A DNA stretch of 64,000 nt. It comes from Oopsacas minuta (Eukaryota > Animalia > Porifera). Positions within the stretch are counted from its first letter, which is position 1. The number at the start of each line of letters is the position of its first letter. Where the stretch lies: contig JAKMXF010000299.1 in assembly GCA_024704765.1 (NCBI GenBank), forward strand, positions 124,001 through 188,000, written 5' to 3'. Of the stretch, positions 53,101-56,041 are shown piece by piece. A model generated the notes under the pieces. The model saw only the letters and a list, made by a program, of their open reading frames with translations, was not told where the DNA came from and searched no databases. Both the position numbers and the translations under genes were made by a program.

Positions 53101-53792
53101 ATTAACCATAAAACAAGGGATAGATGTGTTTTGAAATATATCGCATACAGGTTCGTTTTTTGGTGGATAATAATTATAAACAGAAATTATATATTTGTAT
53201 TTTTAGTTATTTTTCTCGCGAAAAACATAGAAGAGTTACTGGTACGGTTTACGACGCGAATAAAGTGAAGAAATTCGTTCTACGCGGTTTTTGGGATGAA
53301 TTAATGGAGTATGCTCCTGTAACCATAGGTCTTGATGGGGAACAAATAATCGGTGATTATCAAAACTGTTGGACACGAGCAGAACTAAATCTACACGAAA
53401 CTATGTATAATTTCTCACATTTTAATATGCAGCTAAATGAAATGGAACAAGGGATAGCGCCAACCGATTCAAGATTACGACCTGACCAGAGGAAAATGGA
53501 AGATGGAGATTTTGACAAAGCTAATCAAGTAAAAGCTTTACTCGAAGAGAAGCAAAGAGCAAAACGTCGCGAGAGAGAAGCTCTTGCTCTAAAGGCTCTG
53601 CAACATGAACAGAAAGGAGAATTCGAAGAAGCAAAAAAATGCCGAGAGGAGTCTGAATACAAACCATACTGGTTCGAGAAAGATTTCGATCCTTGCACAA
53701 ACACGCTTGTTCACACCTATAAGGGCGGGTATTGGGAGGCCAAAGAGTCTTGTGGATTCAATAATATCAAGACACCAGATATATATTTATAG
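50123..53792 (+). CDS. OSBP: Oxysterol-binding protein (PH, FFAT-like and ORD domains), multi-exon
   Basis: PH domain WLWKWTNYIQGYQKRWFVL...LSYYRS; acidic tract + EFVDT; ORD GKDLSKIPMPV.FNEPLSFLQR, EQVSHHPP and DSRLRPDQR.ME.G. Confidence 0.93.
51808..51977. mobile_element. MITE family A copy (about 170 bp) in an OSBP intron
   Basis: AAGTTTAACTCCCGTCATATCAAA ... GCTTGGATATAACAGGAGTTGAATG|TA; internal segment resembles the 17775 copy (TGAATTGTACAAATATGGTCCCAAAC). Confidence 0.7.
52286..52356. mobile_element. MITE family B copy (71 bp) in an OSBP intron
   Basis: TA|CAGTGAAAACCTCTACAGACGG ... CCGGTTTATAGAGATTACACTG. Confidence 0.7.
52752..52800. mobile_element. Truncated MITE family B copy in an OSBP intron
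   Basis: TTCGGCTTCCCTGGTACCTCATTTGTGGAGGTTACGTTG|TA shares the family B core and right TIR. Confidence 0.55.
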
Positions 53793-54152
53793 CCAGCCAT
53801 CCAATACAAACCTATCTAAGTACTTTATATTACAATAGTTTGGTAATGGCAATGGAAGGCAATAAAGCACTGAAGTTCAAGTCTATCTTTGGTGTATATA
53901 TTTGACAGTCACTGAGCTAGTAGTTGTGATAATTTTGATCAGTAAGTATACATTTTGTTGATCTATTAAATTGTTTTACGAGTATACATATATTAATATA
54001 CATACGGTCCATGCCTGTTGTTGTAATGATTCGTCATTTTCATACACTATATATCAATTGTTTAGCTAATAGCAAGGATTGTATGCAATTATTCACCAGA
54101 ATATGATATATATTGGCATATTAATTAACTTGTACTGTCAGTAAGTTCAAAA

Positions 54153-54793
54153 TTAGAATTTATTATCAAGGATAAAGCATTCAATACTATTTGCTATGTC
54201 CACTTTATTTACCATTTCAAAGGCTTGTTTAAGTATATTCAAGGCTAATGATAGTCTTTTGATAGAGATCTATAGAAATCGATATTATCTTCCATTTCTT
54301 GTAATTCTGAGTTAGGAATTATATCCTCAAAACATGTTTTTATTGTGTTGAACACATCTGCATCAATATCACTAGTTCTCTCTAGAAGAAATGAGCGGAG
54401 TTTCGGTCAGCATCCATGGTTTTCGGTTGTCCATTTTCCTGTGAGTTTACAATATCTTTGTAAAATAATTCATCCAAATTCTTCAATTCTGCATCTGAGG
54501 TTAAAATATCTTCAATTTCTTCTGATAAAACGCATTTATTACAACATTCTAAGTATTCACTTAATAATTTTAAACATAGTCTATGTTCTTTAGATAATAA
54601 TTGCATCATTTTTAGACTTGCTAAACTTTGCTTCTCAAAACGTTCTCCCACTCTCTTGCATTTATCCTGAATAAAAGGCTAATCTCCTCAGATCCTTTCT
54701 GTCTAGTTTGTCCACTAATTGGATTAGTTTGATATTTAGACCGATTTTAGCTTGTAAAGTACCAATATGACTCGGGTAAGATAGACTAGCCAT
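54153..54793 (-). pseudogene. Tandem death-effector-domain (cFLIP-short/caspase-8 prodomain-like) ORF interrupted by 3-4 frame slips; pseudogene or mis-assembled gene
   Basis: Successive frames read MASL...LIQLVDKLDRKDLRRLAFY / ...SLKMMQLLSK...LKLLSEYL...EEIEDIL / KLRSFLLE...FNTIKTCFEDIIPNSELQEMEDNIDFYRSL / LALNILKQAFEMVNKVDIA. These are two DED-like helical repeats. The 641-nt span becomes a multiple of 3 with either repair model. Confidence 0.6.
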
Positions 54794-55140
54794 TGTATAA
54801 TTGTAAACTAGAAATCCCATTAGTCGTAAATAATATTGCGATTATTCTCTACTCTAAATTCATTGGTTGAAACTCTCCGTATTTTTGTATAATTTATTCC
54901 GATTATCATCACGTATTCTTGAGCATATCATCATACTTCTGGTGAACTTCGGACTGTGGAAACAGAGTGAAAATATATAGAGCGAATTCGTAGATCCCAA
55001 CCAGAACCTGGCGTCTCGCCAGGTTCTGGTGGTTGTGAAGAATCATATAATGGCTGAGATTTCAATTTTCACCCCAGAAAAACCGGAGACTCACGGGTAA
55101 GGAGTGAGAGTTGGCATCTCTGCGAATTCCTAATCCAATA

Positions 55141-55252: not shown

Positions 55253-56041
55253 ATGGCTGCATATGGTGGAATATGCAGTAGCTGCAAAGTAAGACGATCT
55301 AATCCTGGTTACAAATGGTGTGTTGAATGTTACAATTACAGCAAAAATAAACTTCCTTCTATACAATGCAAGAATTGTGGCAAACCTCCAAATCCTGGCT
55401 TTGACCTCTGTGAAAATTGCTATCGTAAAGGATTAGAAGCAAACGGGCCTCTTCAAATATCCTGTATTTTGTGCAATAAATCTTGGGCAGAGCCAAATGC
55501 AGATTTATGTAGACAATGTTTGGATTTATTTGCCAACGAAACAGGACCTCAATTAACACAGCAATCGTGTAATAAGTGTACCATAAACATAGCTACTCCG
55601 GGATTCCCTATGTGCGAGGGTTGTCACAGTCGGGAGCAGTTACAGAGGATATATCCATACTATCAACCTTATGCTAACGGTTATGCATCAATGCAAATGC
55701 CTTACCCTATCCCTCAATACACGAGACCTGCACATCACCAGCAATTACCACCAATGACTTACACTCAGGCATATCCCTATCAAAATACAGAGGTTCCAGC
55801 TGCCCAAGATAAAGATGTCAAAAGTCTACTAGACATGGGATCTACACACGTTAATACAAAAGAGAAAAAAGAGAAGGAAGATCGACCGTCTTCCGGTGAA
55901 GCTAGTGACTACCATTGCATATGTCCTCAATGCTATAGCGACACAAGTAGAATTGATCTGTTCTACTGTGTGCATTGTTTTGATAATGTTGTAGAAGGAA
56001 AGGATATCTGTAGAGATTGTACAACAGAGAAGATAAAATAA
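55253..56041 (+). CDS. Orphan Cys-rich protein with four CxxC-x10/11-CxxC repeats, a Y/P/Q-rich linker and a C-terminal Cys cluster
   Basis: Single-exon 262-aa ORF; repeats CSSC..NPGYKWCVEC, CKNC..NPGFDLCENC, CILC..EPNADLCRQC and CNKC..TPGFPMCEGC. Confidence 0.85.
   Translation: MAAYGGICSSCKVRRSNPGYKWCVECYNYSKNKLPSIQCKNCGKPPNPGFDLCENCYRKGLEANGPLQISCILCNKSWAEPNADLCRQCLDLFANETGPQLTQQSCNKCTINIATPGFPMCEGCHSREQLQRIYPYYQPYANGYASMQMPYPIPQYTRPAHHQQLPPMTYTQAYPYQNTEVPAAQDKDVKSLLDMGSTHVNTKEKKEKEDRPSSGEASDYHCICPQCYSDTSRIDLFYCVHCFDNVVEGKDICRDCTTEKIK

What the first reader, a model, noticed from the sequence alone, without database searches (positions are those of the whole stretch)
54153..54793. Hidden tandem-DED (cFLIP-short/vFLIP-like) gene broken only by single-base frame slips
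Seen: the ORF track shows only an 89-aa piece, but consecutive frames carry two DED-like repeats, including LALNILKQAFEMVNKVDIA, which resembles caspase-8 DED2 LDILKRVCAQINKSLL. Adding one base at each of four short runs (gga/ata, aaa/agt, gac/ccg, aaa/aga) yields a continuous 214-aa ORF with no in-frame stop. An alternative three-slip repair gives 213 aa. No caspase or death domain follows. I saw no frameshift in any other gene of the window. Established: DED-only tandem proteins (cFLIP-S, vFLIPs) regulate DISC/caspase-8 and NF-kB. Inference: a recently inactivated allele, local long-read homopolymer errors or, least likely, slippage/recoding-dependent expression.
Basis: partly seen in the sequence, partly recalled or inferred. 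Interest (0 to 1): 0.75.

Follow-up and report, generated by a model that had tools for sequence, protein, structure and literature searches.

The report
Frame-broken DED-like gene, glass sponge
The glass sponge Oopsacas minuta has a small gene for a protein with two death-effector-like domains that six related proteins from other assemblies keep intact at exactly 214 codons, but this copy is one base short at four places: either a very young dead gene or a local assembly error.

Summary
On the minus strand of 54153-54793, five segments in shifting frames line up without gaps against six intact proteins. All six are exactly 214 aa and come from unnamed ENA assemblies, presumably other glass sponges. 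The four-slip reading is right and the three-slip alternative is wrong. Each break is a codon with only two bases left, in or beside a short mononucleotide run.

With X at the breaks the copy is 214 aa and 64-69% identical to the relatives. It has no in-frame stop. Its lineage-specific changes are no more numerous and no less conservative than those of an intact relative, so there is no sign of decay apart from the four breaks.

DED identity is probable but not proven:
- Pfam DED hits lie below threshold in all five relatives scanned (best E 0.0012) and in one window piece (E 0.023).
- Protein-language-model neighbours are DED clusters for the whole protein and for its N-terminal half.
- AlphaFold failed (pLDDT 41), and there were no PDB hits.

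The FLIP likeness is one of architecture only.

The cause of the breaks is unresolved. I lean slightly to a local assembly error (about 50%) over a real recent inactivation (about 40%). Recoding is very unlikely. No independent O. minuta data were reachable. Other first-stage notes on this genome report similar single-base homopolymer losses; I did not test them.

The parts
54674..54793 (-). Coding segment 1, aa 1-40, from the ATG; start of the N-terminal DED-like domain
   Evidence: Aligns to aa 1-40 of P0001-P0005. The start matches the relatives' MA(S/T) start.
54672..54673 (-). Break 1: codon 41 with two bases left, inside a T4 run
   Evidence: context GCCTTTTATTC; frame change 2 to 1.
54639..54671 (-). 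Coding segment 2, aa 42-52 (FRINAREWENV), in a third frame
   Evidence: Matches the invariant FRINEREWESV of the relatives. This decides for four breaks rather than three.
54637..54638 (-). Break 2: codon 53 with two bases left, inside a T4 run
   Evidence: context ACGTTTTGAG.
54406..54636 (-). Coding segment 3, aa 54-130: rest of the N-terminal domain plus linker
   Evidence: tblastn E 4e-36 to P0001. Lies within the 98-aa open piece.
54404..54405 (-). Break 3: codon 131 with two bases left (context GACCGAAAC)
54257..54403 (-). Coding segment 4, aa 132-180: first two thirds of the C-terminal DED-like domain
   Evidence: The open piece holding it (54248-54406) hits Pfam DED at E 0.023, profile positions 2-48 of 82. 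Aligns to the relatives.
54255..54256 (-). Break 4: codon 181 with two bases left, beside an A4 run
   Evidence: context TCAAAAGACT.
54153..54254 (-). Coding segment 5, aa 182-214, and the stop codon (54153-54155): end of the C-terminal DED-like domain
   Evidence: tblastn E 7e-10. In the relatives the Pfam DED match runs to aa 208.

Best explanation
Window 54153-54793 (minus strand) is the single Oopsacas minuta copy of an intronless 214-codon gene. Six proteins from other assemblies, very probably other glass sponges, keep it intact and well conserved. The protein is predicted to be all-helical, with two halves of about 90 residues. The C-terminal half is a probable death effector domain and the N-terminal half a possible one, and nothing else is attached. 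That is the build of FLIP-short, the viral FLIPs and the caspase-8 prodomain. By inference only, it would join or cap the DED assemblies formed by the sponge's own FADD-like and DED-caspase proteins, both of which are present in this genome. In this assembly the frame is lost at four codons. Each is one base short and lies in or beside a short A, T or C run. The copy shows no other sign of decay: no stop, no length change, no excess or harsher amino-acid changes. I therefore think a local error of the hybrid Illumina/PacBio assembly is slightly the likeliest cause, which would mean the animal has an intact, working gene. Shown here: orthology, the four breaks and the lack of other decay. Inferred: DED fold, function and cause of the breaks.
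For: Orthology: an exhaustive HMMER search with the 98-aa piece found one cluster in 1.84 billion representatives, a 214-aa protein. The word search then gave five 214-aa proteins and a sixth by cluster look-up. Their alignment with the X read-through is gapless, at 64-69% identity. No decay: 126 of 166 columns invariant in P0001-P0004 are kept, against 124 of 170 in the intact P0005. There are 18 O. minuta-specific changes with mean BLOSUM62 +0.67, against 22 with +0.77 for P0005. The terminal branch is 0.33 against 0.36-0.38. All four breaks are one-base shortfalls at short runs. DED: Pfam PF01335 matches 5 of 5 relatives scanned, best E 0.0012, covering profile positions 2-79 of 82 at aa 134-208, and one window piece at E 0.023. 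The genome's own FADD-like and DED-caspase genes score only 21.8 and 19.2 bits. The ESM Atlas top neighbours are DED clusters for the whole protein (0.89, 174 shared features) and for aa 1-122 (0.88). Partners exist: a FADD-like gene on C3, and a DED next to caspase exons on C45. Canu-corrected PacBio reads went into the hybrid SPAdes assembly.
Against: The assembly graph is Illumina-based, built in 'careful' mode, polished with Pilon, at 186x. Uncorrected one-base errors should therefore be rare. The flanking genes are clean. My spot check of apparent frame changes in CCT and myosin genes found only normal introns of about 50-60 nt. No independent O. minuta reads or transcripts could be reached. 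DED evidence stays below Pfam's 35.9-bit threshold. AlphaFold gave pLDDT 41, Foldseek gave nothing, and the family profile found no DED in PDB. hhalign to sponge FADD-like DEDs was not significant.
Confidence: 0.5

Rival explanations
1. The four shortfalls are real in the animal's DNA. The gene is a very young pseudogene, or a null allele fixed or common in the isolated cave population. It may have been hit in one mutagenic repair event, or by repeated slippage at short runs.
For: The sequence comes from a polished, high-coverage, Illumina-based assembly. Neighbouring genes and the conserved genes I sampled show no such errors. O. minuta is reported to have lost many genes and to come from an isolated population. 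No public gene model from this locus appeared in the two length-limited word searches, while the neighbouring gene's protein is in NCBI.
Against: Four independent frame-breaking hits should come with many neutral substitutions, and probably stops. None is seen: no stop in 210 codons, 18 conservative lineage-specific changes against 22 in an intact relative, and no longer branch. All four events are of one kind, a one-base shortfall at a short run. Mismatch-repair genes are present, four MutS and three MutL matches, so no special mutator is indicated.
Confidence: 0.4
2. The shortfalls are real and the mRNA is still decoded into the 214-aa protein, through four -1 ribosomal frameshifts, transcriptional slippage, or insertional editing at the short runs.
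For: All four shifts go the same way and lie at or beside A or T runs. At break 4 the A4 run would allow a lysine tRNA to re-pair one base back. Other notes report programmed frameshifts in this genome's retroelements and antizyme (not tested by me).
Against: Six relatives encode the protein in one uninterrupted frame, so the sites are not conserved recoding signals. None of the four sites is a canonical X XXY YYZ heptamer, as read from the sequence. Runs of 3-4 bases are far shorter than known slippage tracts (established knowledge). Four events in series would give a negligible yield.
Confidence: 0.02
3. The family is real and conserved, but it is not a DED protein. It is a lineage-specific helical protein whose weak DED signals are noise. 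This rival concerns identity, not the cause of the breaks.
For: All DED scores are below threshold. A second unrelated Pfam family (Chp1-like PIN) scores similarly in 4 of 5 relatives. There were no PDB sequence hits to any DED. The AlphaFold models are unconfident. Atlas scores under 0.9 are leads only.
Against: The DED match covers nearly the whole profile at the same place in every relative. All ten best Atlas neighbours with a Pfam family belong to the death-fold clan, both for the whole protein and for the N-terminal half. The genome's bona fide FADD-like DED scores hardly better against Pfam. The helix pattern fits two six-helix units.
Confidence: 0.2

Closest known systems
cFLIP-short / cFLIP-R and viral FLIPs (MC159, KSHV K13): tandem-DED-only regulators of the FADD-caspase-8 complex
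   Same: Similar size (about 200-220 aa). Two DED-like halves and nothing else. The partners exist in the same genome, a FADD-like gene and a DED-caspase.
   Different: No detectable sequence similarity to any FLIP, caspase-8 or FADD chain in PDB, or to the sponge's own DEDs. To my knowledge cFLIP arose from caspase-8 within vertebrates, so any likeness would be convergent. The RxDL motif is only loosely kept (K-V-D-I here, N-E-V-D/E-I in the relatives). Function not tested.
Caspase-8/-10 prodomain (tandem DED)
   Same: Two DEDs in tandem at about the same spacing.
   Different: No caspase domain follows, here or in the relatives, which all end at residue 214. The O. minuta DED-caspase locus on C45 is a different gene with no BLAST similarity.
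Unnamed DED-only proteins of about 196-209 aa in cnidarians and echinoderms (ESM Atlas clusters)
   Same: Nearest language-model neighbours (0.88-0.89). Similar length. PF01335 is carried by 51-100% of the members of the three nearest clusters.
   Different: No alignment or E-value links them. The exhaustive HMMER search with the N-terminal piece found nothing outside the 214-aa cluster.
FADD (DED plus death domain)
   Same: One DED of similar divergence from the Pfam model. About 200 aa.
   Different: FADD's second half is a death domain. The sponge FADD-like gene (L001 1489-2109) is a separate locus with its own relatives P0008 and P0009. hhalign found no significant match to either half.

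Membership tests
214-aa protein family in ENA assemblies (P0001-P0005, P0007) | Colinear, gapless alignment over all 214 positions with significant similarity | tested here: met
   tblastn E 4e-36, 2e-35 and 7e-10. The X read-through is 214 aa at 64-69% identity, and 104 of 122 columns invariant in all five aligned relatives are kept.
214-aa protein family in ENA assemblies (P0001-P0005, P0007) | One uninterrupted reading frame | tested here: not met
   Four two-base codon remnants at 54672-73, 54637-38, 54404-05 and 54255-56.
Death effector domain (Pfam PF01335) | Score at or above the curated cut-off of 35.9 bits | tested here: not met
   15.4 bits for the window piece. 16 bits for P0001, and a best E of 0.0012 among the five relatives.
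Death effector domain (Pfam PF01335) | Six-helix death-fold bundle | tested here: inconclusive
   AlphaFold2 gave mean pLDDT 41 with one and with ten sequences. The models are all-helical, but no tertiary fold can be trusted. Foldseek found no match.
Death effector domain (Pfam PF01335) | RxDL-type motif in helix 6 and a hydrophobic patch on helix 2 | tested here: inconclusive
   Read by eye. The C-terminal domain has K-V-D-I here and N-E-V-D/E-I in the relatives. The N-terminal domain has N-(R/K)-(W/C)-V-L. F/L-rich stretches lie where helix 2 would be. No structure-based register is available.
FLIP-type tandem-DED regulators (cFLIP-S, vFLIP) | Two DEDs in tandem and no other domain | tested here: inconclusive
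   The C-terminal DED is probable. The N-terminal one rests on Atlas neighbours and an internal hhalign at E 0.06. No further domain.
FLIP-type tandem-DED regulators (cFLIP-S, vFLIP) | Detectable homology to caspase-8 or FLIP DEDs | tested here: not met
   The family profile against PDB found no DED chain at E up to 10. No BLAST or hhalign similarity to the sponge DED-caspase or FADD-like loci.
FLIP-type tandem-DED regulators (cFLIP-S, vFLIP) | Binds FADD or caspase-8 and modulates caspase activation | not testable with these tools
   Needs binding or cell-death assays.
Programmed -1 frameshift / recoding site | Frameshift conserved in relatives, with a slippery heptamer and a downstream stimulator | tested here: not met
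   All six relatives are uninterrupted 214-aa proteins. No X XXY YYZ heptamer at any of the four sites (sequence).

The most novel reading that the evidence does not exclude
Glass sponges have their own FLIP-like decoy: a tandem-DED-only protein that arose independently of vertebrate cFLIP and the viral FLIPs and tunes the ancient FADD/DED-caspase complex. Oopsacas minuta has been caught just after switching it off, by four one-base losses at short runs.
Probability: 0.2. Interest if true: 0.55.

Novelty: new member of a known kind. Interest (0 to 1): 0.35.

Why it matters
If the DED reading holds, glass sponges carry a conserved DED-only protein that I did not find described. It would sit beside the FADD-like and DED-caspase genes of one of the earliest-branching animal groups. 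That would make the regulation of the ancestral death-inducing complex testable, not just its presence, and would be a case of FLIP-like architecture arising outside vertebrates and viruses. The locus also matters for annotation. No public protein from it turned up in my two length-limited searches, and the four breaks mark either a genuine fresh gene loss in a genome known for losses or a patch of uncorrected indels. Either way, users of this assembly should know about it.

Tried and rejected
- Pfam and PDB searches of the separate pieces gave only one weak DED hit.
- The word search with the 98-aa piece was blank because of its length window.
- A paralogue search by DNA and by protein in the genome found none, so this is not a dead duplicate of an intact copy.
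I could therefore get no DNA of the relatives, no synteny, no dN/dS, and no read-based contigs of O. minuta.
- The metagenome scan for related loci was blank.
- AlphaFold2 was run twice, on a single sequence and on a 10-row alignment, and both gave pLDDT 41. Foldseek on that model was meaningless, so I did not run the VIA searches.
- hhalign of each half against three sponge FADD-like DEDs and death domains was not significant. Half against half gave E 0.06.
- A naive scan for abutting open frames across the window was too noisy to use. The candidates I looked at were ordinary exons with short introns.
- In the CCT and myosin-head searches I picked out two apparent frame changes by eye. Both were normal introns.
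- A caspase copy at the start of contig C7 does change frame, but it proves nothing either way.
- The idea that mismatch repair is lost was dropped: four MutS and three MutL matches are present.
- Tiny introns at the breaks were rejected. There is no room, and the total length equals the relatives' 214 codons.
- The X-joined read-through was built only inside scripts.

Full report
Setting. The window is G000:C299:124001-188000 of a 61,460,524-base genome in 365 contigs. Earlier notes of this scan name it as the glass sponge Oopsacas minuta. That fits the published assembly of 365 eukaryotic super-scaffolds (PMC10280926). The window has about 35% G+C and holds animal genes with short introns. 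The locus lies between the 3' end of an OSBP-like gene, whose plus-strand stop is at 53792, and a head-to-head gene for a cysteine-rich zinc-ribbon protein at 55253-56041.

The observation. Translating the minus strand of 54100-54900 in three frames shows consecutive open pieces in shifting frames, with windows of only 14-22 nt in which each frame change can happen. This is unusual. In mononucleotide shuffles of the window, only 39 of 31,680 start positions can be read over 640 nt with three or fewer switches. The locus is single-copy by DNA and by protein search of the whole genome.

Relatives.
- The length-limited word search with the 98-aa piece was blank.
- The exhaustive HMMER search against 1.84 billion representatives then gave exactly one hit, P0001: 214 aa, E 1.6e-25, 62% identity.
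- Searching with P0001 gave five proteins, all of 214 aa. All come from ENA assemblies with contigs of 200-690 kb, and they are 64-97% identical to P0001. A sixth protein, P0007, sits in one of their 90% clusters.
- None carries a name, and none is the O. minuta sequence.
- I take them for other glass sponges because earlier notes speak of several glass-sponge genomes in these collections. I could not verify that.
- Their alignment has no gaps, and 124 of 214 columns are invariant.

Anatomy of the broken copy. tblastn of the relatives against the window gives a colinear path through five segments. Exact coordinates come:
- aa 1-40 at 54674-54793
- aa 42-52 at 54639-54671
- aa 54-130 at 54406-54636
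- aa 132-180 at 54257-54403
- aa 182-214 at 54156-54254, with the stop at 54153-54155

Codons 41, 53, 131 and 181 each have only two bases left. The first two lie inside T4 runs, the third in GACCGAAAC, and the fourth beside an A4 run. With X at those four places the product is exactly 214 aa. The three-slip, 213-aa alternative is wrong, because it would skip the short segment FRINAREWENV, which matches the relatives' invariant FRINEREWESV.

No other decay.
- The read-through is 64-69% identical to the relatives, without gaps or in-frame stops.
- It keeps 126 of 166 columns invariant in P0001-P0004, while the intact P0005 keeps 124 of 170.
- On a three-lineage parsimony count, 18 changes are specific to O. 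minuta, with mean BLOSUM62 +0.67. For P0005 the figures are 22 and +0.77.
- In a maximum-likelihood tree its terminal branch is 0.33, against 0.36-0.38 for P0005.

Selection on the protein therefore acted along essentially the whole O. minuta branch.

What the protein is.
- Pfam's DED model matches aa 134-208 of all five relatives scanned. The best E-value is 0.0012, over profile positions 2-79 of 82.
- It also matches the window piece that holds the first two thirds of that domain, at E 0.023.
- All these scores are below the 35.9-bit threshold. However, the genome's own FADD-like protein (L001 1489-2109) and the DED of its DED-caspase locus on C45 reach only 21.8 and 19.2 bits. Glass-sponge DEDs in general are thus far from the model.
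- The ESM Atlas puts DED clusters first for the whole protein (0.89, 174 shared features) and for aa 1-122 alone (0.88). Every one of the ten best neighbours that carries a Pfam family is from the death-fold clan. These are leads only.
- hhalign of the two halves against each other aligns equivalent C-terminal helices at E 0.06.

Tests that failed or were negative:
- AlphaFold2 gave pLDDT 41 twice, and Foldseek gave nothing.
- The family profile found no DED chain in PDB.
- hhalign against the three sponge FADD-like DEDs was not significant.
- BLAST against the FADD-like and DED-caspase loci found nothing.

I conclude that the C-terminal DED is probable and the N-terminal one possible. 'FLIP-like' describes the build, not descent or a shown function. 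A role as a DED-only partner or cap of FADD/DED-caspase assemblies is inference. It rests on the established behaviour of tandem-DED proteins and on the reported sponge DISC of Amphimedon (PMC13012725).

Cause of the breaks. Three readings are open.

(a) Local assembly error. All four events are one-base shortfalls at short runs, which is the typical residue of long-read consensus, and nothing else in the gene has decayed. Canu-corrected PacBio reads were assembled together with Illumina reads. Other first-stage notes on this genome report the same pattern in other genes: single-base homopolymer losses in otherwise intact genes. I did not test those notes.

(b) Real, very recent inactivation. 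The assembly is SPAdes-based and Pilon-polished at 186x. The flanking genes are intact. The two apparent frame changes I picked out among the CCT and myosin matches were ordinary introns of about 50-60 nt. On the other hand, four independent hits would normally come with dozens of neutral substitutions and probably stops, and none is visible. A special mutator is not indicated, since MutS and MutL homologues are present.

(c) Recoding. The relatives are uninterrupted, the sites are not canonical slippery heptamers, and the runs are too short.

I put these at about 0.5, 0.4 and 0.02. The collection holds the neighbouring gene's protein only from NCBI. The metagenome scan was blank.

Annotation status. 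Neither the pieces nor a spliced model of this locus appeared in the protein collection within 54-171 aa or 118-374 aa, while the neighbouring gene's protein is there from NCBI. The locus therefore seems to be unannotated in the public record, as far as these length-limited searches can show.

Rules observed. The gene is a host gene, not a toxin or a virus. The read-through was made only inside scripts, with X at each break, and was kept in /scratch. 

Verdict. This is a real, previously hidden gene of a conserved family so far seen only in a handful of assemblies, with a probable tandem-DED build. Whether the animal's own gene is broken remains open, and a simple read-mapping or PCR test would decide it.

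Noticed in passing
window 55253-56041 (+): The head-to-head neighbour encodes a 262-aa cysteine-rich protein made of repeated CxxC zinc-ribbon modules. Its Pfam hits are only weak (DZR_2 at E 4e-4, DZR, ZZ_ADA2). The exact protein is in NCBI/UniRef as a single-member cluster.
   Followed up: partly
L009 (G000:C45:26500-33500): This is the DED-caspase locus. A proline-rich N-terminus is followed by a DED split by an intron (L009 about 1700-2230), with caspase exons about 2.8 kb downstream. Between them lies a 276-aa same-strand ORF (L009 3534-4364) that looks by eye like an unrelated enzyme gene, possibly nested. Neither the gene model nor that ORF was checked.
   Followed up: no
L001 1489-2109 (G000:C3): A FADD-like 206-aa ORF with a weak Pfam DED hit (E 2e-4) and an R-H-D-L motif, followed by a C-terminal half that looks death-domain-like by eye. 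It has two relatives in ENA assemblies, P0008 (which carries PF01335) and P0009.
   Followed up: partly
whole window: Long A/T runs are scarce for a 65% A+T sequence. There are 140 runs of 5, 43 of 6 and only 5 of 7 or more. My own back-of-envelope expectation from base composition is roughly 210, 70 and 33. Whether the cause is dense coding, a mutational bias or the assembly is open.
   Followed up: no
L006 (G000:C7:1-1500), around 690-710: A caspase-family copy at the very start of contig C7 changes frame between two adjacent Pfam matches, with no room for an intron. The change fits one missing base near short G/A runs. It could be a pseudogene of this expanded family or an error at a contig end.
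   Followed up: partly
G000, genome-wide: The caspase domain (PF00656) gives 46 matches, including a tandem cluster on C288 at 461-476 kb. This points to a large caspase expansion beside very few DED genes.
   Followed up: no
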